IMG/VR virus record: IMGVR_UViG_3300023184_000027
Span: 143,953 to 207,952 of that record
Direction: 5' to 3' (one strand)
Length of the DNA: 64,000 bases
Part shown: one piece after another, positions 22,401 through 54,076 of the stretch
Layout: every line of letters begins with the position of its first letter
Position numbering within the stretch: position 1 is the first letter of the stretch
The notes under the pieces: model-generated
Told to the model about the DNA's origin: nothing
The model's input: only the letters and a program-made list of their open reading frames with translations
Databases searched by the model: none
Position numbers and translations under genes: made by a program

Positions 22401-22643
22401 AGTTACTCGTATTCTTTCATATTTTATATCTGAAGGTGGCCAACTAATACTCGTTAACACTCTTATACGACCTAAACTATTATTACTAGAAGAAAAAGTC
22501 CCATTAATGCACCAAATATTTTTTATTTGGTTTGGCATTAACTCCACCTGTCTTTTCCAAACAGAATCAGACAAATTTTGAAAAGTTATAGTTATTTTTT
22601 CATCACCATCATTTATTACCACTAGTCTTTGACCTATTGACAT
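16500..22643 (-). CDS. Giant surface/virion protein: two PKD-like + DUF285 (BspA-like) repeat blocks, four Fn3-like repeats, Pro/Thr stalks
   Basis: TIDWGDGT x2; many [20 protein letters not shown] repeats; long TPTPTKTP runs; no signal peptide. Confidence 0.85.
19230..19625 (-). repeat. Longest Pro/Thr (mucin-like) low-complexity tract
   Basis: About 130 codons of [10 protein letters not shown]; shorter tracts near 17810-17905, 18215-18285, 18880-18930, 21500-21690, 22320-22410. Confidence 0.9.
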
Positions 22644-40850: not shown

Positions 40851-41969
40851 TTAACATTGTACCGCAATATGAGTTCTAGTAAAAAGATAAGAATCTAAAA
40901 CACTATTATCTGTTGCGTCTTTAATATCAAGACGTATATTACTTGTATATGTGTTAGTTCCCGTTCCCATATATCTAAATGCCGCAATTCCAAAATTATA
41001 TTTTTTACTATTTCCAGCAGATATTGAATTATTTGAAAGATTACTAAACACTTTAGTAACTCCTGTCCCACCAGGAAGGGTGGTAGTATATGCTGCTCCT
41101 CCCGTAAATATAGATGTAATATCCACTTTTATATTTATTGACGTATTAACCGTAACGGTAACACTATTCCAACATTCCGGGAAATTTTCAAAATCGTTAA
41201 CAACTGTTAAAGATGTTAAAAGATGTGTTGGTGTAGGTGTTTTTGTCGGTGTAGGTGTTTTTGTAGGAGTTAATGACTGTGTGGGGGTTATTGTTGGGGT
41301 TAATGTTGGAGTATTTGTTGGGGTTTCCATCGGAGACGCCCCTGGCGTTCCAGTAACAGTTGATGTTACAGTCGTTGTTGGTGTTTGAGTTGGAGTTGTC
41401 GTTGGTGTTTGAGTTAATGTCATCGTAGGTGTTATTGTTGGTGTAGATGTGTTAGTGATTGTTGGTGTTTGAGTATTTGTTGGTGTTGGAGATATTTCGA
41501 TTGTTTGACAACTATTATTAACACAAACATCTGTAATTGAAATGTTCACATTTTCATCCGCAAATGGCAATCTACCACAAACATAAAATGTTGTTGATTG
41601 AGGGATTATACCAGTAAACATAGTTCCATTACATTGAGTATATCCAAAATTTAAATTACCTATCCCAACATTAATAAACGCAATACAATTACATGAAATG
41701 TTTGTTGGAGTTATTGTTGGTGTTTGTGTTAATGTTGGTGTTGGTGTAGGGGTAAAACAATTAATATAATTCATTGTTTCACATCCTTTACTATCAGTTA
41801 TAACTACTAATAATTGGTTAACTCCATTTAGTTGTGTTGGAGGTGTTATTGTTATAGGTGCTGAAGTCACACCACTAATTACAAAATAACAATAAGTGTA
41901 TGTCATATCACATACTGTGATAATAAAGGGTGGATGCCCCACTAAACTAGTGATTTCTATTGACTGCAT
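40851..41969 (-). CDS. Pro/Thr-rich, Cys-containing putative virion protein
   Basis: ~90-residue TPT tract between small beta domains; ATATTTATC at 41973-41981 just upstream. Confidence 0.7.
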   Translation of the reverse strand: MQSIEITSLVGHPPFIITVCDMTYTYCYFVISGVTSAPITITPPTQLNGVNQLLVVITDSKGCETMNYINCFTPTPTPTLTQTPTITPTNISCNCIAFINVGIGNLNFGYTQCNGTMFTGIIPQSTTFYVCGRLPFADENVNISITDVCVNNSCQTIEISPTPTNTQTPTITNTSTPTITPTMTLTQTPTTTPTQTPTTTVTSTVTGTPGASPMETPTNTPTLTPTITPTQSLTPTKTPTPTKTPTPTHLLTSLTVVNDFENFPECWNSVTVTVNTSINIKVDITSIFTGGAAYTTTLPGGTGVTKVFSNLSNNSISAGNSKKYNFGIAAFRYMGTGTNTYTSNIRLDIKDATDNSVLDSYLFTRTHIAVQC

Positions 41970-42042
41970 ATTGATAAATATAATTACAACTCATTTTAAT
42001 TAAATTGTTTTTCTTGACAAACATATTCGTTTTATTATTTTT

Positions 42043-44793
42043 ATGTCTATGAAAAAAGTTTTAATTATAACACCCCATTTAAGTACAGGTGGTGCACCTC
42101 AAGTCACCCTTAATAAAATAAAGTTATTAAAAGACGATTACATTATTAAATGTGTCGAATATTCTTTGGTTGCTTGGAACTATGTAGTCCAACGAAATCA
42201 AATTGAAAATATGTTATTAGATAATTTCCACCCATTAGGAGATAATAAATCTGAACTTATTAATATTTTAAAAGATTTTAATCCTGATGTTGTTAGTATG
42301 GAAGAATTTCCTGAATTCTTTATGGATGATGAAATAACAAAAGAAATATATAAGGAAGACCGTAGATACACTATTTTTGAAACTACCCACGATTCTAGCT
42401 TTCCTGTAACATCAAAGAGATACTTTCCAGATAAGTTTATATTTGTAAGCGCGTTTAACGCGTTCAGATATTCTATCTTTGATATTCCATATGAAATAAT
42501 TGAATATCCTGTGGATGTTAAAATAAAAAATCAAAAAGAGAATCAGGAGAAATTAGATTTAAGTTCTGATTGGAAACATGTTGTTAATGTTGGTTTATTC
42601 ACCTCAAGAAAAAATCAAAAATATCTTTTTGAGATTGCCGAATACTTAAAGAATTATAAAATTAAATTTCATTTTATTGGGAATCAAGCGGACAACTTTA
42701 AAGATTATTGGGAACCTTTAATAACTAACAAACCTAAAAACGCCATTATTTGGGGTGAGAGAAATGATGTGGATAGTTTTATTCAAGCATCCGATGTATT
42801 TTTCTTTTCATCAAAAGGTGACCGAAATAATAAGGAGTTAAACCCTATCGCAATTAAAGAAGCTTTAGAGTATAGAATACCTATGATGATGTATAATTTG
42901 GAAGTTTATTGTGATAAGTATAGTAACGAAGAATTTATAACATTTTTAACAGGTGATTTAAAAATAGATTCGGAAAATTTATTAAATATTTTGGGTGTTG
43001 AGATTGATAAAGAATTAACATCTCATATTAATGATGATGAAGTCATTATCATTAGTACTTATCCCGACACTATTAAACGCAAAAATCTAACGATTGAATG
43101 TATAGAAAGTTTTAAAAAATTAGGTAGAAAAATTATATTAGTTTCTCATTATCCGGTACCAAATGAGATACAAGAAATGGCAGACTATTATATTTTTGAT
43201 TCAAATAATTTATTGATTCCTCATTCATATTACACCCATTTTTATCATAATACGGACCAATATAATGCTCAAATAAATATCAATGGGTTGTCAAAATCAA
43301 ATCAATCATTAGCTGCTCATATTAATTTTATGAATGGTGCAAAATTCGCTAAAGTTATTGGAGCGACAAAATTTATGATAATAACTTATGATGTTACCTT
43401 AAACGAATTAGACATTCCTTTAATTGAAGAATATTTTAATAAATTAACAAATTGGAATTGTTGTTTATCTTACATGGATAATGGTGTTGAAACAACCTCT
43501 ATGGTGTTTAAAACTAGTTATTTTCTAAATACTTTTTTAGATATTAATGATGAAGAAACATTTAATAATCATTGTTCTGAATTAAAGTGTCATAATTTTT
43601 TAGAAAATTACTATATGAAAATTTTAGAAGGTAAAGAAAACCTTTGGATTGAACATAATAATAAAAAAACAATTTTACCAAATTCAGGTTTGGGGGTATC
43701 ATCTAATTCTGAATATTATTCAATTTTACCTGTTAATGACACCAAAAATAGGTGGGTGTTTTATTTTTACACATATAATATTGACAATCGCAGATTGGAA
43801 TTATCAATTAATAAATCGGGTAAAAACATCTTTAACGATTCAATCATTATCTCTGAACATACATTAATTGCTGGTTCAAATAGGGCAAAGTATTTTAAGT
43901 ACATTGATTATAATGGAAACCCTATGGAGATTACCATTTCATTTTATGATGAAGATAATTTACATAAAACAGAAACTTATGAATTAAACAATACAACAAT
44001 TCACCAATATTATGACAATGGGTTCTTTAATGAAATAAATAAAACAGACAATTTACTTTTAACATCTAAAATTGAATCACCAACCTATAAAATTAAAGTT
44101 TTACATTTACAAACAACGATAGATGATAGTCGAGAACATTTATCCAGAGAATCTATTCAAAAATTAAGCGATTATGGATTTAATTATATTTTACATAAAA
44201 ATGTTCCTTACACATCATTACCACCATCACACAATTGTTTAAGACCTCATAATGTAAGATTAAAGAAGTATGATGATAGTAATGACCCCGAGTTTGGAAA
44301 TGCCTTAACACCATCTCATTATGGGTGTTTTGAATCCTTTAAATTAGGGATTATGTCTGAGTTTGATAATGATTTAGATTTTTTAATTGTTTGTGAAGGT
44401 GATTGTATTATTGAGACAACTATTGAAGAATTTATTAATAAAGTTAATCAATCATGTGAGATTATTAATAATGAAGATATTTCTTATTTTTCGTTTGGAG
44501 ATACTAAAACATTAGATTTCGGGTGGCATCAATCTAATGTTGTTAAAGAAATTCCTAACCAAGATTTATTATTCATCACAGATAAAATAATTGGGTTACA
44601 ATGTATAATGTTTCCTATAAAAACTAAAGAATATCTCATCAACCAATTCAGAAATGAAAAATGGGATTGTATGGACACTTTTTTTAATATTATTTTCTCA
44701 AATAAAAATATGGGAATTTTAAAAAATAGAATAACAACTCAAGCGGACGGATATTCTTTAATAGATAAAGAATTAAAAACATTTATAAAATAA
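42043..44793 (+). CDS. Multidomain glycosyltransferase (GT4-like + uncharacterised GT-like + GT25-like)
   Basis: PHLSTGGAPQ, VGLFTSRKNQ, ELNPIAIKEAL; IILVSHYP; HYGCFES...CEGDC. Confidence 0.8.
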   Translation: MSMKKVLIITPHLSTGGAPQVTLNKIKLLKDDYIIKCVEYSLVAWNYVVQRNQIENMLLDNFHPLGDNKSELINILKDFNPDVVSMEEFPEFFMDDEITKEIYKEDRRYTIFETTHDSSFPVTSKRYFPDKFIFVSAFNAFRYSIFDIPYEIIEYPVDVKIKNQKENQEKLDLSSDWKHVVNVGLFTSRKNQKYLFEIAEYLKNYKIKFHFIGNQADNFKDYWEPLITNKPKNAIIWGERNDVDSFIQASDVFFFSSKGDRNNKELNPIAIKEALEYRIPMMMYNLEVYCDKYSNEEFITFLTGDLKIDSENLLNILGVEIDKELTSHINDDEVIIISTYPDTIKRKNLTIECIESFKKLGRKIILVSHYPVPNEIQEMADYYIFDSNNLLIPHSYYTHFYHNTDQYNAQININGLSKSNQSLAAHINFMNGAKFAKVIGATKFMIITYDVTLNELDIPLIEEYFNKLTNWNCCLSYMDNGVETTSMVFKTSYFLNTFLDINDEETFNNHCSELKCHNFLENYYMKILEGKENLWIEHNNKKTILPNSGLGVSSNSEYYSILPVNDTKNRWVFYFYTYNIDNRRLELSINKSGKNIFNDSIIISEHTLIAGSNRAKYFKYIDYNGNPMEITISFYDEDNLHKTETYELNNTTIHQYYDNGFFNEINKTDNLLLTSKIESPTYKIKVLHLQTTIDDSREHLSRESIQKLSDYGFNYILHKNVPYTSLPPSHNCLRPHNVRLKKYDDSNDPEFGNALTPSHYGCFESFKLGIMSEFDNDLDFLIVCEGDCIIETTIEEFINKVNQSCEIINNEDISYFSFGDTKTLDFGWHQSNVVKEIPNQDLLFITDKIIGLQCIMFPIKTKEYLINQFRNEKWDCMDTFFNIIFSNKNMGILKNRITTQADGYSLIDKELKTFIK

Positions 44794-45806
44794 TGAAAAA
44801 ATTATTTGTAATTGGGGCATACCCCAACACTAAAAAAAAGGAAGAAATTTTAAAACAAGAAATTTTATCATTAAAACATTTAGATTACGATATTATGATT
44901 GTTAGTCATTACCCGGTTTCCGAAGAAATCCAATCAATGGTTAATTTTTATTTTTACGATAAAAATCAAAAACTAACACCTCAACAAAACACAAACGGGG
45001 ACATGTTATCACCATATTTTTGGGCTGCTCAAGAATCCTTTTATGTTAAAGTATTTAATCAAAGACATGGATTACCAATTTGTCAAAACATGTATAATTC
45101 TTTTAAATTTTCCGAAATACAAAAATACGATTTTGTATTTTTTTTAGAAAACGATAATATTTTTAGTAAAGAAGATACCTTAAAGTTTGATGAGCTACTG
45201 GAAAATATGATATCAAACAATAAAAAATGTATTTTTTTCAAAACACCTATTCACACACAGGGGGATTTTAGATTTAGAGAAGGTGTAAACGCCTTTTATG
45301 AAACACAATTATTTGGTGTGACACCTCAATATTTTAATGAAATTTTCAAATTACCAATTAATGAAAAAGAATGGTTTGAATTTGGGATGGGATACACATT
45401 AGAAGAGTCTTTCTATTTAAAATTAAACATATATGAAGATAACTTTTTAATTATACCAGACTACTCTTTTAACTTTTTTAAAGAAAGTGAAATTAATCTT
45501 ATTAGGTCAGAATCATTTATATTAGAAGTTTTATATAACGAAAGTAATCCTTCTTCACCAATATTATATTGTGAGAATAATACCAAAAATAATGAAATAA
45601 AAAAAATATCTATAGAAATTAATAATATTGTAGAAAATAATGAAATACGCCCTTCACAATGGTTTTATAAAAAATTATCTTTAGACGGTAATGAATTAAC
45701 TATCACTGTTTTTGATGAAGATGGTAGCATTGATTTCATTAAAAAAGTTCATTTAATAGATGATAATTTAGAACAAATAAAAGAAAAAGGAATAATAATT
45801 TTTTAA
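44793..45806 (+). CDS. Uncharacterised GT-like protein (full-length copy)
   Basis: AYPNT..K, IMIVSHYPV, FLENDNIF; paralogous to the middle domain of 42043-44793. Confidence 0.6.
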   Translation: MKKLFVIGAYPNTKKKEEILKQEILSLKHLDYDIMIVSHYPVSEEIQSMVNFYFYDKNQKLTPQQNTNGDMLSPYFWAAQESFYVKVFNQRHGLPICQNMYNSFKFSEIQKYDFVFFLENDNIFSKEDTLKFDELLENMISNNKKCIFFKTPIHTQGDFRFREGVNAFYETQLFGVTPQYFNEIFKLPINEKEWFEFGMGYTLEESFYLKLNIYEDNFLIIPDYSFNFFKESEINLIRSESFILEVLYNESNPSSPILYCENNTKNNEIKKISIEINNIVENNEIRPSQWFYKKLSLDGNELTITVFDEDGSIDFIKKVHLIDDNLEQIKEKGIIIF

Positions 45807-45815
45807 TTAATTATG
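45083..45815 (+). repeat. Direct repeat copy 1 (~730 bp)
   Basis: Colinear with 48474-49205 up to and including the next ATG. Confidence 0.95.
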
Positions 45816-46718
45816 ATACAATATAAAAAAATGTTTATTGCGGGTGCCAATGGGATGTTAGGTACCACTTTACAAAGTTTAACAGATACTTCTCAATATC
45901 TTCTAACAGATAAAGATATAGATGGTGATGTACGTTATTGCGACATTAGAGATTTAAATCAAACTTCTAATATTGTGAAAGAATATAACCCTGATATTAT
46001 TTTAAATTTCGCAGCGTTAGTTGATTTAGAGTATTGTGAACAAGAAAAAGACGATTGTTACTTAACAAATACTATCGCATCTATTAATTTATTTAATTTA
46101 GCTAAAGACCTTAATATACCATATGTGTTTATTAGTACCGCAGGGATATTCGGTAATGATAAAGAATTTTATACTGAAGAAGATATTCCACATCCATTAA
46201 GTGCCTACGGAAAAAGTAAGTATTATACAGAACAGTTATTACAAAATCAATCCTACGAAAAATATTGGATATTTAGAGCAGGATGGATGATGGGTGGAGG
46301 ACCGTCCAAAGATAAAAAATTCGTAAATAAAATTATGAATCAAGTTAAATCCGGTGTTAAAGAACTTAATGTTGTTGATGATAAGCTAGGTGTACCTACT
46401 TATACAAAAGATTTTGCAAATTCAATATTGAGACATTTATCAGAAGAACTTCCTTATGGGTTATATAATATGGTAAGTTCCGGTGAGGCGAGTCGATATC
46501 AAACGGCGGTTGAAATAAATGAATTTTTACAATTAGGGTTAAAAATTAATAAAGTAGGAAGTGATTTTTTTTCAAAAGAATATTCAGCGCCTAGACCTTA
46601 TTCAGAGAAATTAATTAATAAATCATTAAACAATTTACATAAAAATTATATGAGAAATTGGAAAGATTGTTTACATGAATATTTATCTGAATTCTATAAA
46701 AATAAAAAAATCACATAA
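45813..46718 (+). CDS. rmlD: NDP-4-keto-6-deoxyhexose reductase (RmlD-like)
   Basis: GANGMLG, NFAA.VD...CE, ISTA.IF, PLSAYGKSK, GVPTYT.D, APRP. Confidence 0.75.
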   Translation: MIQYKKMFIAGANGMLGTTLQSLTDTSQYLLTDKDIDGDVRYCDIRDLNQTSNIVKEYNPDIILNFAALVDLEYCEQEKDDCYLTNTIASINLFNLAKDLNIPYVFISTAGIFGNDKEFYTEEDIPHPLSAYGKSKYYTEQLLQNQSYEKYWIFRAGWMMGGGPSKDKKFVNKIMNQVKSGVKELNVVDDKLGVPTYTKDFANSILRHLSEELPYGLYNMVSSGEASRYQTAVEINEFLQLGLKINKVGSDFFSKEYSAPRPYSEKLINKSLNNLHKNYMRNWKDCLHEYLSEFYKNKKIT

Positions 46719-46722
46719 TATT

Positions 46723-47385
46723 ATGAAAATAAAATTTACGATAAGTTCACGTAAATTAGGGTTTGAACAAACTTATCCTATTATAATTAAAAGTTTAATT
46801 GAAAATAATGTCCCACCACAAGACATATATTTTTTTGTTGGTGGGTACGATTCCATAACTCAAAGTATTACCGATGAAGGTGTTAATCTTATACAAGTTA
46901 ATCAAAATTCCATAGATTATACAGGTCTTATAGGTGTATTAGATTTAGATATTGTGTCAGATTATTGGGTTTTATTACATGACACATGTTATGTTGGACC
47001 TAACTTTTATAATCATATTATGTCTTACAATTATAATTATACCCCCGCCGTTGGATTAATTTTTGAGGAATGTTGTATGAATATTGGTGCTTATAGTTGG
47101 GAATATTTACAAAAAATAAAATCAAATTTATTAGAATACCGTAATACTGATTTTTCAGAAGAATCAATTCAGAAATGGAAAACAATTGGAATAGTTGATG
47201 AAGATAAGTTTTTATCTGAATATAATGTTGAAAATCATTATTGTGTATCATCACGAATACATAGTGGTCCTGTCGATATCTATAATACAGGTACACCTAG
47301 ACTAGTCGAATATTTTCCGGGTATAGATTTATACAAATTAAAGGCCAATTGGTACCGAAGAGAGATTTACGAATTAAGTGTATGA
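46723..47385 (+). CDS. Putative glycosyltransferase
   Basis: NSIDYTGLI, YWVLLHDTCYVG; operon context; start moved to ATG 46723. Confidence 0.55.
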   Translation: MKIKFTISSRKLGFEQTYPIIIKSLIENNVPPQDIYFFVGGYDSITQSITDEGVNLIQVNQNSIDYTGLIGVLDLDIVSDYWVLLHDTCYVGPNFYNHIMSYNYNYTPAVGLIFEECCMNIGAYSWEYLQKIKSNLLEYRNTDFSEESIQKWKTIGIVDEDKFLSEYNVENHYCVSSRIHSGPVDIYNTGTPRLVEYFPGIDLYKLKANWYRREIYELSV

Positions 47386-48497
47386 TAAAATACGATTTTT
47401 TAATAGTGGGTGCGGGTCTTTTTGGTAGTGTTTGCGCTAGAGAATTAACAGATAACGGATATAAATGTTTAGTTATTGATAAAAGAGAACATATTGGTGG
47501 GAACTGTTACACTGAAAATAGAGATGGTATAAACATACATATGTATGGACCACATATATTTCACACTTCAAATGAACGAGTTTGGGAATACGTAAATAAA
47601 TATATTTCATTTAATAATTACATATGTTCCCCTGTGGCAAATTATAAGGGAGAAATTTATTCTCTACCCTTTAGTATGTGGACATTTTCTAAAATGTGGG
47701 GAATCTCTTCACCAAAAGAAGCGATGGATATTATTGAAAAACAAAGTATCCATATTCAAAAAACCCCATCTAATTTAGAAGAACAAGCAATCAAAACTGT
47801 AGGTATTGATGTATATAATAAATTAATCAAAGAATATGTTGAGAAACAGTGGAAAAAATCACCTACAGAACTTCCATCTCAAATTATAAAAAGATTACCC
47901 GTAAGATTTACATACGATAATAATTATTTTTTAGACAAATATCAGGGAGTTCCAATTGGGGGGTACACTAATTTTTTTAATAAATTACTTGTAAATATTG
48001 ATGTCAATCTTGGTGTTGACTATTTAAAAGATTCTTTACCTTCCCATAATTTCACTATTTATACCGGACCTATAGATAAATTTTATAATTATGAATTTGG
48101 GGAATTAGAATATAAATCCACAAATTTTGTTCATAAAAAAATGAACACAACAAATTACCAAGGAACGGCTATTATGTCATTCACCGACAAAGAAACAATT
48201 TATACCAGAATTATTGAACACAAACATTTTGAAAATTCTATATCAAATATTTCTTGGATTACTTACGAGTACCCAATAGAATATAACGTACATGAGGTAG
48301 AACCACATTATCCCGTTAATGATGATAAAAACACATTGATTTATCAAAATTATAAAAAAATGGCAGATAAAGAAAAATCGGTTTTATTCGGAGGGAGATT
48401 AGCGGAATATAAATATTACGATATGCACCAAGTAATAGAATCAGCCTTAAACACTGTTGATAAAATATTAAAATCAAAATATGGTAAATTCGTTTAA
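47382..48497 (+). CDS. glf: UDP-galactopyranose mutase
   Basis: IVGAGLFG, HIGGNCY, YGPHIFHT, RLPVR, YQGVPIGGY, GRLAEYKYYDMHQ; start moved to ATG 47382. Confidence 0.93.
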   Translation: MIKYDFLIVGAGLFGSVCARELTDNGYKCLVIDKREHIGGNCYTENRDGINIHMYGPHIFHTSNERVWEYVNKYISFNNYICSPVANYKGEIYSLPFSMWTFSKMWGISSPKEAMDIIEKQSIHIQKTPSNLEEQAIKTVGIDVYNKLIKEYVEKQWKKSPTELPSQIIKRLPVRFTYDNNYFLDKYQGVPIGGYTNFFNKLLVNIDVNLGVDYLKDSLPSHNFTIYTGPIDKFYNYEFGELEYKSTNFVHKKMNTTNYQGTAIMSFTDKETIYTRIIEHKHFENSISNISWITYEYPIEYNVHEVEPHYPVNDDKNTLIYQNYKKMADKEKSVLFGGRLAEYKYYDMHQVIESALNTVDKILKSKYGKFV

Positions 48498-49205
48498 TTT
48501 TTCTGAAATACTAAATTATGATTTTGTCTTTTTTTTAGAAAACGATAATATCTTTAGTAAAGAAGATTCCTTAAAGTTTGACGTACTATTGGACGATATG
48601 ATTTTAAACAATAAAAAATGTATTTTTTTTAAAACACCTATCCATACACAGGGAGATTTTAGATTTAGAGAAGGTGTGGACTCCTTTTATGAAACACAAT
48701 TATTTGGCGTAACACCTAAATATTTTAACGAAATTTTTAAATTACCAACAAATGAAAAAGAATGGGTTAATTTTAACATGGGATACACATTAGAAGAGTC
48801 TTTTTATTTAAAATTAAACAGATATGAAGACAACTTTCTAATTATACCAGACTACTCTTTTAACTTTTTTAAAGAAAGTGAAATTAATCTTATTAGGTCC
48901 GAATCATTTATATTAGAAGTTTTATATAATGAAAGTAACCCTTATTCACCAATATTATATTGTGAAAATAATTCAAAATATAATGAAATTAAAAAAATAT
49001 CAATTAACATTAACAATGTTATTGAAAATAATGAAATACTTCCTTCACAATGGTTCTACAAAGCACTATCTTTAGATGGTGATAAATTAACTATAACCGT
49101 TTTTGATGAAGAAGGTAATACAGATTTTATTAAAAAGGTTCATTTAATTGATAATAATTTAGAACAAATAAAAGAAAAAGGAGTAATAATATTTAATTAA
49201 TTATG
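48474..49205 (+). repeat. Direct repeat copy 2 (~730 bp)
   Basis: Encoded peptide differs from copy 1 at about 32 of 238 residues (hand count). Confidence 0.95.
48481..49200 (+). CDS. N-terminally truncated duplicate of 44793-45806 (lacks first 99 aa); possibly non-functional
   Basis: Starts at the equivalent of Met100; frame still open. Confidence 0.7.
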   Translation: MVNSFNFSEILNYDFVFFLENDNIFSKEDSLKFDVLLDDMILNNKKCIFFKTPIHTQGDFRFREGVDSFYETQLFGVTPKYFNEIFKLPTNEKEWVNFNMGYTLEESFYLKLNRYEDNFLIIPDYSFNFFKESEINLIRSESFILEVLYNESNPYSPILYCENNSKYNEIKKISININNVIENNEILPSQWFYKALSLDGDKLTITVFDEEGNTDFIKKVHLIDNNLEQIKEKGVIIFN

Positions 49206-49748
49206 GCACACAAAAAACAACAAGAATTTTACGAAAGAGTAAAACAACATTTACCTCAATATTTTAGCGACGTAAAAGTACTAGATATAGGTTCGTTAGA
49301 TATTAACGGAAATAATAAACATTTTTTTAACCACCCATTTTATTATGTTGGGGTTGATTTAGCGGAGGGGCAAAATGTTGATGTTATTTGTCCGGGTCAT
49401 TTATACAATTCAGGGTTTTTATTTGATGTCGTTACATCATCTGAATGTTTTGAACATGATATGTATTATGCGAGAACACTACAAAATATGGTTAAACTAC
49501 TTAGACCAGGAGGATTAATGTTATTCACTTGCGCTTCAACAGGAAGACCTGAACATGGTACATTAAACGCAAATCCATTTGACGCACCATTTTTAGAGGG
49601 TATTGATGAAAAATGGTCTAACTATTATAAAAATTTAACAGAAGACGATGTTCGTTCAGCTATAGAAATTAATAATACTTTTGTAACATTTAACTTTGAA
49701 TATGAGCCAGAATCTTGTGATTTGTATTTTTGGGGTGTAAAAAAATAA
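49203..49748 (+). CDS. Class I SAM-dependent methyltransferase
   Basis: VLDIGSLDING, YVGVDL..G.NVD, FDVV.S.ECFEHD, LLRPGG. Confidence 0.85.
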   Translation: MAHKKQQEFYERVKQHLPQYFSDVKVLDIGSLDINGNNKHFFNHPFYYVGVDLAEGQNVDVICPGHLYNSGFLFDVVTSSECFEHDMYYARTLQNMVKLLRPGGLMLFTCASTGRPEHGTLNANPFDAPFLEGIDEKWSNYYKNLTEDDVRSAIEINNTFVTFNFEYEPESCDLYFWGVKK

Positions 49749-49756
49749 ATAATTAT

Positions 49757-51901
49757 ATGAGAATAACACAAGTAACTCCGGGTGTAATCCCAATACCCCC
49801 TAATGGATGGGGTGCCGTCGAAAAAATATTATGGTGTTACCATAACGAATTTAATTCTTTGGGACACGAATGCACAATAAAATATTTAAATGAGGCTTCT
49901 ACCGATAATTCGGATATAATACATATCCACATAGCTAATTTAGCTTTAGATGCTGCGGAAAGAGGGATTCCTTACATTTTTTCCTTACACGACCATCATG
50001 TTGTTCATTACGGGAAAGATTCGTTTAACTATCGCCAAAATTTAGAGGCAATACAAAAATCGGTAATTTCATTTTGTCATGCTGAATATTTAATTGACTA
50101 CTTTGACGGAACTGATAAATTATTTTATCTATCTCATGGGGTGGAAGTTGATTATTTTAAAGTTGCTGATTTATATAGGAAAGAACATAAATTGCTTTGT
50201 ATTGCAAATAATGGTATTGGTGGTGACGCATCGTTTGATAGAAAAGGGTTTAGGTATGCTATTGAGGCGGCTAAAAAATTAAATCTTCCAATAACAATCG
50301 CCGGACCAGAAAATAATAAATTATTTTTCCAACATCACCCTGATTTGTTAGAATATGAAAATTTAACATTATTATTAACCAACTTAAGTGAAGATGAAAT
50401 TTTAGAGTTATATAAATCACATTCAATATTTTTACATCCGTCAATATTAGAAGCTGGTCACCCAAATTTAACATTATTGGAAGCGGTCTCTTGTGGGTTA
50501 CCGGTTGTTGGAACTTATGAAGGGTCTCAAAAAATAGATGGGATGATTGTATCTGAAAGAAATTCTGATAGAGTTGCCGAATCAATATCTAAAATAATAA
50601 ATGAATATAAGAATTATGTTGATTTAACACAAAATAATAGAACCAAATTTGATTGGACAACTATCTGTAAAAGAATGGTTGATATGTATAAAGTTGTTAA
50701 TCTAATTAAAAAAGAATATTCTTCCGAAGAAACCAAAAATTTATTTATTGATAATTTTAATAATATTGTTAGGTCACCTATAATTACTCAAACAAAAACA
50801 GAAAGTGTTACACCAATTGTGGAAAAAATTAAACCAAATGTAAAATATAATTTTCATTTTGTTAATCAACCTTTTTTTGAAATATTAGGAGATAGCGATA
50901 AAAAATTTAATGTTGAATTTTACGATGAAGGTAATTTACATCATCACTCAGAATTATCGTCAAATATGTGGACTAAAGTAGGTAGAGAATACTTTACAAA
51001 TTGGTATATCAAAGTTTCTTGTGATAATGACATTGTTTTTGAATATAACCTTGATTTAACAAATAGGAGAGTTTTTATTTCTTTTGAATCTAGTTCATTA
51101 GGCGATAGTATTGCTTGGATTCCATATGTGTTAGAATTTAAAAACCAACATAATTGTGTTGTAATTGTATCAACATTTTGGAATAAATTATTTAAAAAGT
51201 CTTATCCCGAATTGGAATTTGTTGAGCCAGGTGCAACCATCCATAATTTATTTGGTTTATATAGAATTGGTTGGTTTGAAAACGAAACAAAAGAACCTTT
51301 TTATCCTAACACAATACCATTACAAAAAACGATAACAAATCTCTTAAAATTAGAACACACAGAAATTAAACCAACTCTTGACTTCGTACCTAAATCAAGA
51401 CCTATAGTTGAGAAGTATATTACGATAGCGGATGAATCAACCGCCGGATTAAAACTATGGAATAACTTAAATGGGTGGAAAGAACTTATTGAGTATTTAA
51501 CTAAATTAGGATATAAAATTATTAACATATCTAAACATGGTGGGAATTATAAAAATGTCGCAAAATTAAAAGACACATCAATAGAGAATACGATGAACTA
51601 TATTCACCATAGTGAATTTTTCATAGGATTATCAAGTGGGTTATCTTGGCTATCATGGGCGTTAGGTAAACATGTTGTTATGATTTCTAACTTTACCGAA
51701 TCTGACCATGAATTTACATCAAACTGTACTAGAATTACAAATGATTCTGTGTGTAATGGATGTTGGAATAAATCTGAATATCGGTTTGACCGTGGTGATT
51801 GGAACTGGTGTCCCGAAAATAAAGGAACTCCTCGTCAATTTGAGTGTCATAAATCAATAACCTCTGAAATGGTAATAAAACAAATACAACATTTATTATA
51901 A
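49757..51901 (+). CDS. GT4-like domain fused to TibC/Aah-type (BAHT) protein O-heptosyltransferase
   Basis: PPNGWGAVE, EAGHPNLTLLEA; SSSLGDSIAW.PY, FIGLSSGLSWLSW, VVMISNF, CNGCWN...WCP...FEC (4-Cys motif); start moved to ATG 49757. Confidence 0.8.
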   Translation: MRITQVTPGVIPIPPNGWGAVEKILWCYHNEFNSLGHECTIKYLNEASTDNSDIIHIHIANLALDAAERGIPYIFSLHDHHVVHYGKDSFNYRQNLEAIQKSVISFCHAEYLIDYFDGTDKLFYLSHGVEVDYFKVADLYRKEHKLLCIANNGIGGDASFDRKGFRYAIEAAKKLNLPITIAGPENNKLFFQHHPDLLEYENLTLLLTNLSEDEILELYKSHSIFLHPSILEAGHPNLTLLEAVSCGLPVVGTYEGSQKIDGMIVSERNSDRVAESISKIINEYKNYVDLTQNNRTKFDWTTICKRMVDMYKVVNLIKKEYSSEETKNLFIDNFNNIVRSPIITQTKTESVTPIVEKIKPNVKYNFHFVNQPFFEILGDSDKKFNVEFYDEGNLHHHSELSSNMWTKVGREYFTNWYIKVSCDNDIVFEYNLDLTNRRVFISFESSSLGDSIAWIPYVLEFKNQHNCVVIVSTFWNKLFKKSYPELEFVEPGATIHNLFGLYRIGWFENETKEPFYPNTIPLQKTITNLLKLEHTEIKPTLDFVPKSRPIVEKYITIADESTAGLKLWNNLNGWKELIEYLTKLGYKIINISKHGGNYKNVAKLKDTSIENTMNYIHHSEFFIGLSSGLSWLSWALGKHVVMISNFTESDHEFTSNCTRITNDSVCNGCWNKSEYRFDRGDWNWCPENKGTPRQFECHKSITSEMVIKQIQHLL

Positions 51902-51902
51902 C

Positions 51903-51928
51903 AAAAAACCCCAATTAAGGGGTTTTTT
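51903..51928. terminator. Bidirectional intrinsic terminator
   Basis: AAAAAACCCC-AATTAA-GGGGTTTTTT between convergent genes. Confidence 0.85.
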
Positions 51929-52803
51929 TATTGTTTTCTAATTGAGTCTATAATTTGATTTACATCAAAAATTTCATTTAAATCATTATACGGAATACTT
52001 GTCATATCTTGGAATAATAAATATTTTGAATAATGACTATGGTCTAACATAACCTCTTTTGTTGGAGTATTTGCCGTTATATTTGTATTGCTATGGTATC
52101 CAAAAACATTGGGGTTAGTTCCAACCCAAGTAACAACAGATGGAAGATTTAATGATGCTGCTATGTGCATAACGCTTGAATCAATTAACAATCGTTTTTT
52201 AGATAAACTCAATAAAATAGCAATACTTCTAAAATCATCTAACGCTTGTAAAGTGTCTTCATAAACAAATTGGTCTTCTCTTTTAATATGAAGAATCGCG
52301 TAATCATTTTTAAAATATCTAATCACTTCCTCTATTGTTGGTTGAGGTATATCACGAGTCCAACTATATTTTAAAGGTTGTCCGGCGGCACCACCATTTG
52401 GTTGGATAACCATAATTGGTTTATCTACTTTATAGAATTGTGTGAAGTATTGTTTTTCGGCTTCAGATATAAAAATTTCAGGTAATTCTCCTCTATAATC
52501 AACACCGAACATTTCACACCAAATCTGAATTAAGTGTTTGGATTCTGTAATATAATCTGATGTTTGATACGGTTCTCCAACAAACACTTTAGATTCTTGG
52601 TCCATAATGTATTTAGCGTAAATACCCGATAATTGACCGTGGTTTAATACCTTGTTCATATTTGGATTGTTAATAAAAACATCCGGATAACCTGACACGA
52701 CAATTATATAAGAGTCAGGATATTGTCGTCTAATTGCTTTTAATACTGCGGTTCCCATTACACTTTTTCCGAGACCACCTTCTATTGAAAATATTATATT
52801 CAT
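51928..52803 (-). CDS. GT9-like (heptosyltransferase-fold) glycosyltransferase
   Basis: GGLGKSVMGTAVLKAIRRQYP, VFINNP, IDSSVMHIAASLNLPSVV. Confidence 0.75.
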   Translation of the reverse strand: MNIIFSIEGGLGKSVMGTAVLKAIRRQYPDSYIIVVSGYPDVFINNPNMNKVLNHGQLSGIYAKYIMDQESKVFVGEPYQTSDYITESKHLIQIWCEMFGVDYRGELPEIFISEAEKQYFTQFYKVDKPIMVIQPNGGAAGQPLKYSWTRDIPQPTIEEVIRYFKNDYAILHIKREDQFVYEDTLQALDDFRSIAILLSLSKKRLLIDSSVMHIAASLNLPSVVTWVGTNPNVFGYHSNTNITANTPTKEVMLDHSHYSKYLLFQDMTSIPYNDLNEIFDVNQIIDSIRKQ

Positions 52804-52815
52804 ATTTGTTTTTTT

Positions 52816-53262
52816 TTAATTGTTTAATATTTTTTTTATACATTCATTAACACCAATGTTTGTGGTGTCAATATTAATAAAGTTTTCCGTAGGTGATTCA
52901 TAGTCATCAACAAATAAATTTTCCCTACCTCTAATTTCGGATGTGTGAACATAAATCTCTGTAATTTTTCTACCCATCTTTTTCTTAAATTCTTCTCTTT
53001 GGTCTTTATAAGGAGATACTAATGAAACAACAACATGAACACTTTGAGAACTGAGATATTGAGACATTTGTTGAGCGAGTTGGATATTTTTTCTTCTACC
53101 CTCTTCAGAATAATCTTTATTATCAAATAAATCTCTAATATCATCACCGTCAATGTGGAAACATAATTCTCTTTTAAAATCAATTAGTGATGAACATAAT
53201 TCTTTTCCCAATGTTGTTTTACCGGCACCCGGTTGACCTGTTATCCAATATATGTTAGACAT
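52816..53262 (-). CDS. cysC: Adenylyl-sulfate (APS) kinase, compact
   Basis: WITGQPGAGKTT, IDGDDIR, YSEEGRRKNI, VVVSLVSPY, YESP; start moved to ATG 53262. Confidence 0.8.
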   Translation of the reverse strand: MSNIYWITGQPGAGKTTLGKELCSSLIDFKRELCFHIDGDDIRDLFDNKDYSEEGRRKNIQLAQQMSQYLSSQSVHVVVSLVSPYKDQREEFKKKMGRKITEIYVHTSEIRGRENLFVDDYESPTENFINIDTTNIGVNECIKKILNN

Positions 53263-54076
53263 ACCCAAAATAATCGTAAAACCATTTATAATGATTCTTA
53301 ATATTGGTGGATAATTCATAACCCAATATATCAAGATAATCATCTGGCATTTTTTTAAATTCTTTTCTCAATACATGGTCACCAAATATACCGTGAACAA
53401 CATCATTTTCGTTTGTTACCTGTTCAATAGATTCAAAATTGTGTCCTTGATACATAGGTTGTCCAATGTAGTCGTAAAATCGTTTTATTTCCCTTTCAGG
53501 GTTATCCATTAAATCCTCGTATCTAATGAATAATATTTTAGAGTGAAGGTTTTGTTGGAAGATATCTTGTAATCTATCTACCGTCACACCAACCGGTGGA
53601 CCACTAGCCCAAATATCAACTCGTTTGTTTACAGTAGTTCCAACTAATTCGTTTGGGTTCTGTATATGACTTTCTTTGTGGGGATTTTTTCTAAAGTTCT
53701 TCTCCATAGAGGAGTAGACACATCTTAAGTCTCTAATCATACAAACAATCTTTGGGTCTTCTTTGAATAAACTCAATAGATTGTAGTTAATACCCCACCC
53801 TCGACTCTTGTCTAACACATAGGGTTTATCTGTTAATTCCTCAAAGAATCCTTGAATCCCTTTTCTACAAAAATTAATGAATGCCTTCTCCATTAATTTG
53901 GGGTCTTGAGCTCTAATTTCTTGAGAACCATTATAATGATTTTTTGCTCCGGATACCAACTCAATTAATCCTGATGTTGGGGTTACGTAAAATTGGGGAT
54001 TTTGTCCGATTAAATTTTGAAATAGGGTTGAACCTGCTCTAGGTAGAGAAGAGTTAAAAAAGATTATCTTATCCAT
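53255..54076 (-). CDS. PAPS-dependent sulfotransferase
   Basis: 5'-PSB SLPRAGSTL, DKSRGW, 3'-PB IRDLRCVYSS, IRYEDL..PE. Confidence 0.88.
   Translation of the reverse strand: MDKIIFFNSSLPRAGSTLFQNLIGQNPQFYVTPTSGLIELVSGAKNHYNGSQEIRAQDPKLMEKAFINFCRKGIQGFFEELTDKPYVLDKSRGWGINYNLLSLFKEDPKIVCMIRDLRCVYSSMEKNFRKNPHKESHIQNPNELVGTTVNKRVDIWASGPPVGVTVDRLQDIFQQNLHSKILFIRYEDLMDNPEREIKRFYDYIGQPMYQGHNFESIEQVTNENDVVHGIFGDHVLRKEFKKMPDDYLDILGYELSTNIKNHYKWFYDYFGYV

What the first reader, a model, noticed from the sequence alone, without database searches (positions are those of the whole stretch)
45083..49205. rmlD-GT-glf sugar cassette flanked by ~730-bp direct repeats: a potential pop-out glycan switch
Seen: the 3' two-thirds of gene 44793-45806 is repeated at 48474-49205 (~87% aa identity by hand count). 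Both copies run through TTAATTAATT to the ATG of the next gene. The glf C-terminus (KSKYGKFV) reads into the repeat start, consistent with a junction. Inference: one crossover between the copies would delete about 3.4 kb (RmlD-like, GT, Glf), leave an intact chimeric gene and couple it directly to the methyltransferase. The cassette may have arrived this way, and the population could toggle or amplify Galf/deoxyhexose decoration.
Basis: partly seen in the sequence, partly recalled or inferred. Interest (0 to 1): 0.7.

Follow-up and report, generated by a model that had tools for sequence, protein, structure and literature searches.

The report
Recombination scar around phage sugar cassette
In a freshwater jumbo phage, three sugar-synthesis genes sit between two similar ~730-bp segments, but these are two different alleles of one glycosyltransferase gene joined by recombination between related phages; there is no sign that the genes are switched in and out.

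Summary
Segments 45083-45815 (R1) and 48474-49205 (R2) are direct repeats, 88% identical in DNA and 87% in protein. They flank an RmlD-family reductase, a small GT-A glycosyltransferase and a UDP-galactopyranose mutase (Glf). The window is the end of a 208-kb jumbo myophage. The genes lie inside a ~9.9-kb glycan operon.

The repeat did not arise by duplication in place. R2 is 99.2% identical to the matching part of a full-length allele in another phage contig (L106). There the gene directly abuts the methyltransferase and no cassette is present. Identity to L106 starts exactly at base 48474. L106's left flank is only ~84-85% identical to the window. So R2 is the 5'-truncated remnant of a second allele, and it lacks the nucleotide-binding half of the GT-A fold.

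All ten related lineages examined lack the cassette.

A crossover between R1 and R2 would cleanly delete 3391 bp, and the phage has a UvsX-like recombinase. However, three assemblies are identical, contig depths fit one cassette per genome, and no deletion joint or chimeric allele was found.

Verdict: an ordinary but well-resolved phage mosaic junction. A switch is unsupported.

The parts
42014..42041 (+). Promoter-like site just upstream of the operon's first gene (weak evidence)
   Evidence: TTGACA-16-TATTTT, 10 of 12 matches. The number of such sites in the region is no higher than in shuffled sequence.
42043..44793 (+). 916-aa multidomain glycosyltransferase (GT916). It has a GT1 domain, a central GT-A-like domain paralogous to the N-terminal part of gene A, and a C-terminal domain.
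   Evidence: It is 88-89% identical in protein to L008, L010 and L096.
44793..45806 (+). Gene A (allele A1), 337 aa. GT-A fold glycosyltransferase (residues 1 to ~235) with a C-terminal beta-sandwich. Hypervariable within this phage family.
   Evidence: No Pfam, PHROG or NCBIfam hit. AlphaFold2 model with pLDDT 90.6. Foldseek matches TarP, TarS, AvpGT and KdsB. About 75% protein identity to relatives whose flanking genes are about 90% identical.
45083..45815 (+). R1, the left repeat: codon 98 of A1 through the spacer to the ATG now used by the reductase gene
45803..45815 (+). Junction J1: the conserved spacer TTAATTAATT plus ATG. Repeat homology ends at the start codon, and the reductase gene is full length from its own ATG.
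   Evidence: the spacer is conserved in relatives before the methyltransferase gene. (homologues of the reductase share its N-terminus).
45813..46718 (+). RmlD-family NAD(P)-dependent sugar 4-ketoreductase, 301 aa. Below the RmlD equivalog cut-off.
   Evidence: It is 79-85% identical to proteins in many freshwater phage glycan islands. No RmlA, RmlB or RmlC is found in the 208-kb record.
46723..47385 (+). 220-aa GT-A fold glycosyltransferase. Homologues sit beside glf in other phages.
   Evidence: Atlas. (model pLDDT 81, all top PDB matches are GT-A enzymes). (adjacent to glf in L029, L042, L063 and L101).
47382..48497 (+). UDP-galactopyranose mutase (Glf), 371 aa. Complete; its last 7 codons and stop come from R2.
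   Evidence: (model positions 1-377 of 378 matched by residues 3-363).
48467..48480 (+). Junction J2: a non-homologous joint between 48473 and 48474, at a codon boundary of glf
   Evidence: Identity to L106 and L096 begins exactly at 48474.
48474..49205 (+). R2, the right repeat: the remnant of allele A2 from codon 98, with its native junction to the methyltransferase gene
   Evidence: It has 6 mismatches in 724 nt against L106. The junction to the methyltransferase gene is conserved in L008, L010, L096 and L004.
48481..49200 (+). A', an open 239-aa frame corresponding to A2 residues 100-338. It lacks strands beta1-beta3 of the GT-A sheet and is probably an inactive remnant.
   Evidence: It matches full-length P0168 at 238 of 239 residues.
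49203..49748 (+). SAM-dependent methyltransferase, 181 aa. A homologous recombination breakpoint against L106 lies near 49650.
   Evidence: (phrog_32762).
49757..51901 (+). 714-aa GT1 plus GT9 protein. Cluster mates are named Aah/TibC-type autotransporter O-heptosyltransferase.
51903..51928 (+). Intrinsic-terminator-like hairpin that ends the operon. No such site lies inside the operon on the + strand.

Best explanation
The structure is a recombination scar in the glycan operon of a freshwater jumbo myophage. Two related phages carried different alleles (A1 and A2, about 12% apart) of a hypervariable GT-A glycosyltransferase gene. They recombined out of register. The left parent contributed GT916, A1, the RmlD-like reductase, the small GT-A enzyme and Glf. 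The right parent was L106-like and contributed A2 from codon 98 onward, followed by the methyltransferase gene. The join (J2, 48473|48474) has no homology and falls at the very end of glf. This left a 5'-truncated A2 copy (A') that looks like a direct repeat of A1. The other cassette edge (J1) sits exactly at a start codon behind the conserved spacer TTAATTAATT.

The net effect is the gain of a three-gene module: UDP-galactofuranose supply, a matching transferase and a 6-deoxyhexose-type reductase. The module sits inside a tightly packed operon, probably one transcription unit. That the operon probably decorates virion or other proteins and glycans is an inference.

A' lacks the nucleotide-binding half of the fold and is most likely an inert by-product. 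It is still open because the event is recent (0.8% divergence from L106).

The two copies could recombine and delete the cassette, restoring the ancestral A-methyltransferase layout. This would be an occasional one-way loss, and nothing shows that it happens at a measurable rate.

Shown: the repeat, both junctions, the parental allele, the cassette-less synteny in relatives, the folds, and the stability across assemblies. Inferred: the order of events, the identity of the left parent, the enzymatic products, and the inactivity of A'.
For: The window is part of a jumbo myophage. R1 and R2 are 88% identical in DNA. The 90% cluster of A' contains a full-length 338-aa protein, P0168. It matches A' at 238 of 239 residues, and it is 87% identical to A along its whole length, including the N-terminal 99 residues. 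Its contig L106 reads GT916 end, A2, methyltransferase, with no cassette.

L106 positions 1448-2723 match window 48474-49749 at 98.4%. R2 has 6 mismatches in 724 nt, and the identity starts exactly at 48474. L106's GT916 end and A N-terminus are 83.9% and 84.8% identical to the window. The first 60 nt of R2 are also 98% identical to the L096 allele, against 83% to R1.

All ten related lineages examined lack the cassette and a second A copy. Nine place A directly before the methyltransferase or big-GT gene; one (L006/L007) has a 191-aa gene there. The junction from the end of A to the methyltransferase gene is conserved in relatives.

The reductase is complete from its own ATG, and Glf is complete. 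The cassette genes resemble genes of other freshwater phage glycan islands at 31-85% identity. The A model shows a GT-A fold, and A' begins in helix 93-109, after strands beta1-beta3.

The dN/dS ratio of 0.1-0.3 is what two functional alleles would give. Flanking genes differ from relatives by about 10%, similar to the difference between R1 and R2.

A parallel case exists in L010, L011 and L098. There an added paralogue is flanked by a perfect 101-nt repeat made of the upstream gene's 3' end through the next ATG. A UvsX-like recombinase is encoded.

Stability: contigs of run X1 give depths of 34.1 (41900-45416), 31 (45479-48807, spanning J1 and J2) and 32.4 (48870 onward). The 122-nt node has depth 45.1, against 44.5 predicted for one cassette per genome. 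Pieces with 100% identity occur in X2 and X4, which belong to another study. The ENA SPAdes contig L107 is 100% identical over 12,663 nt.
Against: The left parent (A1 followed by the cassette, without R2) has not been sampled, so the order of events is inferred. In principle L106 could have received its R2-methyltransferase patch from the window's lineage. That would need a crossover within a few bases of the R2 edge, and it would not explain the L096 match. Some central segments (45390-45510) are 93-98% identical between R1 and R2, while both are only 63-83% identical to other alleles. This shows earlier exchange between the A1 and A2 lineages and blurs a clean two-parent picture. Only contigs were available, not raw reads, so rare excision products cannot be excluded. 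Whether A' is made or has a role is untested.
Confidence: 0.8

Rival explanations
1. Duplication in place, or Campbell-type insertion. A circular or linear donor carrying the cassette plus a copy of the 3' part of A integrated by one crossover, or a template switch re-copied 733 bp. This produced two initially identical repeats that later diverged to 88%.
For: The geometry (repeat, insert, repeat, with the ancestral junction kept on the right) fits this model. A and A' are each other's best match among cluster representatives. Central tracts are 93-98% identical. The L010 case has a perfect 101-nt repeat.
Against: R2 is 99.2% identical to the full-length L106 allele, against 88% to R1, and that identity begins exactly at the junction. 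The 5' end of R2 is L096-type. Divergence of 12% in place should have left sampled cassette-bearing descendants and decay in A', but none is seen.
Confidence: 0.07
2. Active pop-out or accordion switch. The phage population regularly deletes, regains or amplifies the cassette by recombination between R1 and R2, which would vary Galf and deoxyhexose decoration.
For: The repeats are in direct orientation. The deletion product would be in frame and would match the layout of relatives. A UvsX-like recombinase is present. The locus is a hot spot of module exchange in this phage family.
Against: No joint skipping 3391 bp appears in contigs of four runs. Depth of the cassette is 0.91-0.96 of the flanks and not above them. 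The structure is identical in three assemblies and in samples from two studies. No chimeric A1/A2 protein is in the 90% clusters. The repeats are 12% apart, and the longest exact match is 61 nt. Only 1 of the 6 differences between R2 and L106 has the R1 base, so conversion since the merger is not evident. An excised circle has no means of persisting, so regain would need another cassette-bearing genome.
Confidence: 0.08
3. Assembly chimera. Two co-occurring strains, one with A1 plus the cassette and one with A2 plus the methyltransferase gene, were merged at the similar segment.
For: Related A alleles do co-occur in these waters, for example the variant contig in X2 at 48687-48819. At k=31 the shared 61-mer makes the graph ambiguous.
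Against: J2 has no homology, yet one 3329-nt contig crosses it together with J1. The longest exact repeat (61 nt) is shorter than normal reads and large assembly k-mers. The JGI contig and an ENA SPAdes contig agree base for base over 12.7 kb. The depths of all parts are equal.
Confidence: 0.02
4. A' is a retained, functional short protein, for example an acceptor-binding or beta-sandwich module that partners with another enzyme, and not a dead remnant.
For: The frame is open over 239 codons and starts at the family's conserved Met100, 17 nt before the glf stop, which allows coupled translation. It keeps the invariant E119-x-D121-N122 motif and the beta-sandwich.
Against: It lost three strands of the central sheet. 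Its intactness is explained by recency: only 6 nt and 1 aa differ from the full-length allele. No other phage in the searches has such a short form as a stand-alone gene.
Confidence: 0.1

Closest known systems
Phage genome mosaicism by illegitimate recombination followed by selection (the Hendrix/Hatfull model; moron-type gene additions). Recalled from my own knowledge.
   Same: There is a novel non-homologous joint at a gene boundary. Genes from other phages are added. The flanks have different nearest relatives. Homologous exchange patches lie nearby, for example a breakpoint near 49650.
   Different: Here the scar is still visible as a partial second allele. One parental allele has been recovered at 99% identity, and both joints are resolved to the base.
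Campbell-type single-crossover integration and pop-out, as in suicide-vector allelic exchange or merodiploid resolution
   Same: An insert is flanked by direct repeats of a target gene. One crossover removes the insert and restores a single intact gene.
   Different: The repeats are heterologous alleles (88%) and not copies of one sequence. No excised form was detected, and there is no means of re-entry.
Recombination-driven gene accordions and unstable tandem duplications (poxvirus K3L amplification, T4 rII duplications). Recalled from my own knowledge.
   Same: The virus has its own recombinase, and direct repeats could mediate gain or loss of copies.
   Different: There is no copy-number excess (cassette depth 31, flanks 32-34). 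The repeats are diverged, and there is no evidence of instability.
Phage-encoded UDP-galactopyranose mutase modules, for example the proposed Galf DNA hypermodification in Pootjesviridae (PMC13326640), and glf genes on 351 matched stretches of IMG/VR viral contigs
   Same: A phage-encoded Glf sits next to glycosyltransferases.
   Different: The context here is an operon with an Aah/TibC-like O-heptosyltransferase-type protein, a methyltransferase, and a neighbouring APS kinase and sulfotransferase, next to fibre-like genes. This points to protein or glycan decoration and not to DNA bases. This was not tested.
E. coli O52 Fcf1/Fcf2 pathway to dTDP-D-fucofuranose (a 4-ketoreductase plus a Glf-like mutase). 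Recalled from my own knowledge and not tested.
   Same: An RmlD-like reductase recurs together with a Glf-family mutase in phage islands. RmlA, RmlB and RmlC are absent from the phage.
   Different: The mutase here scores as a true UDP-Galp mutase equivalog. No biochemical or sequence test against Fcf1/Fcf2 was possible.

Membership tests
Repeat-flanked cassette that pops out by homologous recombination (an active switch) | Two repeats in direct orientation whose crossover leaves an intact gene | tested here: met
   The repeats are collinear with no indel in the coding part, and the product would be 337/338 aa followed by the methyltransferase gene.
Repeat-flanked cassette that pops out by homologous recombination (an active switch) | Repeats similar enough for efficient homologous recombination | tested here: inconclusive
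   88% identity, with a longest exact run of 61 nt. A UvsX-like recombinase is present. The actual efficiency is unknown.
Repeat-flanked cassette that pops out by homologous recombination (an active switch) | The empty (excised) allele, with the same flanks, coexists in the population | tested here: not met
   No 3391-bp joint. Equal depths. No chimeric protein in the 90% clusters. L106 lacks the cassette, but its left flank is only 84-85% identical. Only contigs could be examined, so rare forms are not excluded.
Segmental duplication in place | The two copies are each other's closest relatives along their whole length | tested here: not met
   R2 is 99.2% identical to L106 and 88% to R1. The 5' 60 nt are 98% identical to L096 and 83% to R1.
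Illegitimate inter-genome recombination joint (phage mosaic boundary) | A junction without homology, with the sequences on its two sides having different nearest relatives | tested here: met
   J2 lies at 48473|48474. The right side is L106-type at 98-99%. On the left side, the cassette genes are nearest to other phage islands, and A1 is unique.
UDP-galactopyranose mutase (TIGR00031 / PF03275) | Score above the curated equivalog cut-off, over the full length | tested here: met
   382.9 bits against a cut-off of 303.75. Residues 3-363 match model positions 1-377 of 378. PF03275 scores 1.2e-66.
dTDP-4-dehydrorhamnose reductase RmlD (TIGR01214) | Score above the equivalog cut-off, with partner genes rmlA, rmlB and rmlC | tested here: not met
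   170.7 bits against a cut-off of 224.05. No RmlA, RmlB or RmlC in the 208-kb record. It is filed as an RmlD-family reductase only (PF04321 scores 7e-50).
GT-A fold glycosyltransferases (gene A and the 220-aa gene) | Rossmann-like GT-A fold with an acidic DxD-type motif after strand beta4 | tested here: inconclusive
   The fold criterion is met for both proteins. In the A family, E119, D121 and N122 are invariant after strand 114-119. In the 220-aa family, H86, D87 and T88 are invariant. No sequence-family membership was found and catalysis is untested.

The most novel reading that the evidence does not exclude
This phage family may add genes to its translationally coupled glycan operon by a recurrent, boundary-precise process. 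Each addition would re-copy the 3' end of the upstream gene through to the next start codon. Examples are the 733-nt case here and the perfect 101-nt case around an extra paralogue in L010/L011. The resulting repeats would then act as built-in handles, letting the phage's own UvsX-type recombination shed or shuffle sugar modules at useful rates. That would amount to a cassette system for viral glycan diversification.
Probability: 0.1. Interest if true: 0.65.

Novelty: new member of a known kind. Interest (0 to 1): 0.3.

Why it matters
The finding gives a base-resolved example of how a large environmental phage gains a sugar-biosynthesis module. One parental allele has been recovered and the ancestral, cassette-less layout is documented in ten related lineages. 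It shows that the glycosyltransferase gene A is a hypervariable hot spot: about 75% protein identity where neighbouring genes are about 90% identical. It also shows that this glycan operon is rebuilt by frequent exchange. For annotation, it warns that an apparent direct repeat around a cassette can be two alleles and not a duplication. In that case low dN/dS and an open truncated frame do not show function. It does not reveal a new mechanism or a programmed switch.

Tried and rejected
- Exact-pattern scans for the junction from the end of A to the methyltransferase gene. The IMG/VR scan found nothing. The JGI metagenome scan found only the window's own contig and L011's contig, so no census was possible by that route.
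- Looking for the three-gene cassette as a unit in viral contigs. The 220-aa gene (4 loci) and glf (80 loci kept) never occur with all three genes in the window's arrangement. The best identities are 44% and 69%. No donor was found.
- A protein tree of the C-terminal region. It was unresolved within the close group. Site-pattern and sliding-identity analysis was used instead.
- Polarised substitution counts suggested relaxed constraint on A' (17N:9S against 9N:14S, Fisher p=0.09). I rejected this as evidence because those changes predate the truncation: A' differs from full-length P0168 by only 1 aa.
- Gene conversion after the merger. Only 1 of the 6 differences between R2 and L106 carries the R1 base.
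- A giant-virus origin was considered because of the low GC content and the many glycosyltransferases. It was rejected because tail sheath, adaptor and other phage families are present.
- Sequence-profile searches of the A family against PDB, Pfam, NCBIfam and PHROGs gave no hit. Only fold comparison placed it.
- The short joints listed all have sides under 30 nt at 90% likeness. I treated them as noise, as the tool advises.

Full report
**Setting**

The window is the last 64 kb of a 207,952-bp IMG/VR virus record. It is also known as JGI contig Ga0214919_10000030. The record encodes a tail sheath, a DNA polymerase, a helicase and a head-tail adaptor. GC content is 31.6% and no tRNA genes were found. 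It is therefore a jumbo myophage, and the sample is lake water.

The repeat finder, MAFFT and a whole-genome self-BLAST all give the same pair of direct repeats.
- R1 is 45083-45815 and R2 is 48474-49205, 3391 bp apart.
- They are 88.3% identical over 733 nt, with 92 mismatches and one 1-nt indel beside the stop codon.
- The longest exact run is 61 nt, at 45448-45508.
- At the protein level, residues 100-337 of gene A (44793-45806) match the 239-aa frame A' (48481-49200) at 206 of 238 positions.
- It is the only long, high-identity dispersed repeat in the genome.
- Both copies end in TTAATTAATT followed by an ATG.

**Genes in the region**

The + strand carries eight closely spaced or overlapping genes. 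They run from a promoter-like site at 42014-42041 to a strong terminator hairpin at 51903-51928, with no terminator-like site on the + strand in between.
- GT916, a 916-aa protein with a GT1 domain. Its central domain is paralogous to the N-terminus of A.
- Gene A.
- An RmlD-family reductase. PF04321 scores 7e-50, but it falls below the TIGR01214 cut-off.
- A 220-aa protein with its true start at 46723. It has no sequence-family hit. An AlphaFold2 model (pLDDT 81) matches only GT-A glycosyltransferases.
- Glf, which scores above the TIGR00031 cut-off and is complete.
- A'.
- A 181-aa SAM-dependent methyltransferase.
- A 714-aa GT1 plus GT9 protein. Its cluster mates are named Aah/TibC-type O-heptosyltransferases.

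Gene A itself has no family hit. It models with pLDDT 90.6 as a GT-A fold (residues 1 to ~235) plus a beta-sandwich (240-337). The model matches TarP, TarS, AvpGT and KdsB. The A family has invariant residues E119, D121 and N122 just after strand 114-119. A' begins at residue 100, inside helix 93-109. It therefore lacks strands beta1-beta3, which form the nucleotide-binding half of the fold.

**Relatives lack the cassette**

Forty-seven homologues of A exist, all from phage or metagenome sources. I read the genomic context of ten related lineages:
- L003, L004 and L005
- L006/L007, L008/L009 and L010/L011
- L096/L097 and the contigs of P0004 and P0005
- L106

None has the reductase, the small glycosyltransferase, glf or a second copy of A. 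In nine lineages A directly abuts the methyltransferase gene, or in L003 the big GT gene. L006/L007 instead has a 191-aa gene after A.

L008 (74.6 kb) is collinear with the window on both sides, down to the APS kinase and sulfotransferase genes. The junction from the end of A to the methyltransferase gene, including the spacer, is conserved. The junction at the end of R2 is therefore ancestral, and the one at the end of R1 is new.

The locus is a mosaic hot spot.
- DegT plus an acetyltransferase splits GT916 in some lineages.
- A 2OG-Fe(II) oxygenase follows the methyltransferase gene in others.
- The last GT gene comes in sizes of about 710 and about 940 aa.
- A is about 75% identical to close relatives, where its neighbours are 88-93% identical.

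**The repeat is two alleles, not a duplication**

The 90%-identity cluster of A' contains P0168, a full-length 338-aa protein. Its residues 100-338 match A' at 238 of 239 positions. Across its full length, including the first 99 residues, it is 87% identical to A. Its contig L106 reads GT916 end, A2, methyltransferase, then another gene.

At the DNA level, L106 positions 1448-2723 match window 48474-49749 at 98.4%.
- R2 has 6 mismatches in 724 nt.
- The methyltransferase gene up to about 49650 has 3 mismatches.
- Its last 100 nt have 12 mismatches, and beyond that the sequences are unrelated.

The match starts exactly at 48474. Upstream, the window carries the end of glf, whereas L106 carries codons 1-97 of A2. 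L106's GT916 end and A N-terminus are only 83.9% and 84.8% identical to the window's left flank.

The first 60 nt of R2 are also 98% identical to the allele in L096, against 83% to R1.

R2 is therefore the truncated remnant of a distinct allele, A2. The 12% difference between R1 and R2 is allelic and older than their juxtaposition. This explains three things: the low dN/dS of 0.1-0.3, the open frame of A', and the fact that R1 and R2 differ about as much as flanking genes differ between lineages (about 10%).

L106 is not an excision product of this genome, because its left half is a different sequence.

Some central tracts are much more alike between A1 and A2 than either is to other alleles. 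Those tracts are present in L106 too, so they reflect older exchange between the allele lineages. They are not conversion inside this genome. Of the six differences between R2 and L106, only one carries the R1 base.

**The junctions**

J1: homologues of the reductase share its N-terminus (MTHYKK/MTQFKK...IFIAGANG). The gene is therefore complete from its own ATG, and the joint lies between the spacer and the ATG. Only a few bases of microhomology are present.

J2: other Glf proteins end 6-11 residues after the motif ESALN. Here the native part ends at ...TVDKILK. Seven further codons and the stop are read from A2 sequence in another frame. The unique insert (45816-48473, 2658 nt) is thus almost exactly three open reading frames.

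The cassette genes have no relatives at 90% identity or more anywhere. They resemble genes in the glycan islands of other freshwater phages. The reductase is 79-85% identical, Glf 60-69%, and the small glycosyltransferase 31-44%, often next to glf. The 208-kb record has no RmlA, RmlB or RmlC.

**Is it a switch?**

A crossover would indeed delete 3391 bp and give an in-frame A1/A2 chimera next to the methyltransferase gene. The phage also encodes a UvsX-like recombinase. However, the available data show a single stable form.

In the probable source run X1, Logan contigs give the following picture:

| Contig | Window span | Mismatches | Depth |
|---|---|---|---|
| 3698 nt | 41900-45416 | 0 | 34.1 |
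| 3329 nt (crosses J1 and J2) | 45479-48807 | 1 | 31 |
| 7109 nt | 48870 onward | 0 | 32.4 |
| 122-nt node holding the shared 61-mer | 45387-45508 | 0 | 45.1 |

The depth of the 122-nt node compares with 44.5 expected for one cassette per genome, by my own calculation.

- No joint skipping 3391 bp was reported. The joints that were listed have sides under 30 nt.
- Runs X2 and X4, from another study, hold 100%-identical pieces of A, the cassette, R2 and the methyltransferase gene.
- An ENA SPAdes contig (L107, 146,796 nt) is 100% identical over 12,663 nt spanning the whole structure. A 198-kb ENA contig also carries the identical 220-aa protein.
- The clusters of A and A' contain no chimeric protein.

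These data are contigs, so variants below a few percent cannot be excluded.

Mis-assembly is very unlikely. J2 has no homology to collapse on. The longest exact repeat is 61 nt. Two assemblers agree.

**A parallel case**

In L010, L011 and L098 an extra, distant paralogue of A (331 aa, 24% identity) lies between GT914 and A. It is flanked by a perfect 101-nt direct repeat. That repeat consists of the last 93 nt of GT914 through the next start codon. The architecture is the same: the 3' end of the upstream gene is re-used so that the downstream gene keeps its native junction. Out-of-register recombination thus appears to be a recurrent way of adding genes in this operon.

**Verdict**

The idea that the cassette arrived by recombination is right in spirit. 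The repeats, however, are two alleles joined by an illegitimate inter-phage recombination event. There is no evidence for toggling or amplification. This is a well-resolved example of ordinary phage mosaicism in a glycan operon.

Noticed in passing
L010:8786-8886 and L010:9908-10008 (also in L011 and L098): A perfect 101-nt direct repeat, made of the last 93 nt of the GT914 gene through ATGAAAAA, flanks an added 331-aa distant paralogue of gene A. The architecture is the same as in the window, but the repeat is 100% identical, so the event is probably very recent and possibly unstable.
   Followed up: partly
window 44793-45806 compared with its flanks 42043-44793 and 49203-51901: Gene A is far more divergent between related phages (about 75% protein identity, 71-86% DNA identity) than the genes on either side (88-93% protein identity). 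It shows a patchwork of allele segments. It looks like a diversifying specificity determinant.
   Followed up: partly
window 40851-41969 (- strand): A 372-aa protein with long, degenerate Thr/Pro/Asn-rich 6- to 18-nt-periodic repeats at 41214-41756. It lies divergently just upstream of the glycan operon. Its first 171 residues match 174-aa proteins in L004 and L005 that lack the repeats. It is a candidate mucin-like glycosylation substrate.
   Followed up: no
window 51928-54076 (- strand): An APS-kinase-like gene and a sulfotransferase-like gene converge on the operon's terminator and are conserved in L008 and the P0005 contig. Together with the methyltransferase and the Aah/TibC-like GT9 protein, this suggests sulfated or methylated glycans, perhaps on proteins.
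   Followed up: no
window ~49650 (inside the methyltransferase gene): Identity to L106 drops from about 99% to about 88% within the last 100 nt of the methyltransferase gene and then vanishes. This marks a homologous recombination breakpoint. Separately, the first 58 residues of the 714-aa GT are 100% identical to those in L006.
   Followed up: partly
L003:4727-10004 and L006:4704-10001: In these relatives the GT916 gene is split into a 661-669-aa protein and a 573-577-aa protein, with DegT aminotransferase and acetyltransferase genes between them. Both halves keep a copy of the central GT-A-like domain (26% identity in L003). This looks like an old version of the same overlap-type insertion.
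   Followed up: partly
run X2, window ~48687-48819: A low-depth contig resembles R2 but differs at 5 positions. Four of these are sites where R1 and R2 differ. It is a third A-type allele co-occurring in the same waters.
   Followed up: no
genome C1:126338-127339 (outside the window; L105:805-1803, - strand): A UvsX-like recombinase gene (phrog_97, E=4e-12; a weak RecA Pfam hit).
   Followed up: partly
window 16500-22643 and 57489-63869 (- strand); genome 57749-65128: Giant open reading frames (2047-2459 aa) contain extensive internal, diverged tandem repeats that cross-match one another. They are presumably fibre or decoration proteins.
   Followed up: no
L100, L101, L103, L042, L063: An RmlD-family reductase (79-85% identical to the window's) recurs together with a Glf-family mutase in the glycan islands of unrelated freshwater phages. 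These loci show no RmlA/B/C-type Pfam hits. This raises the possibility of a 6-deoxyhexofuranose pathway (Fcf1/Fcf2-like) rather than rhamnose.
   Followed up: no
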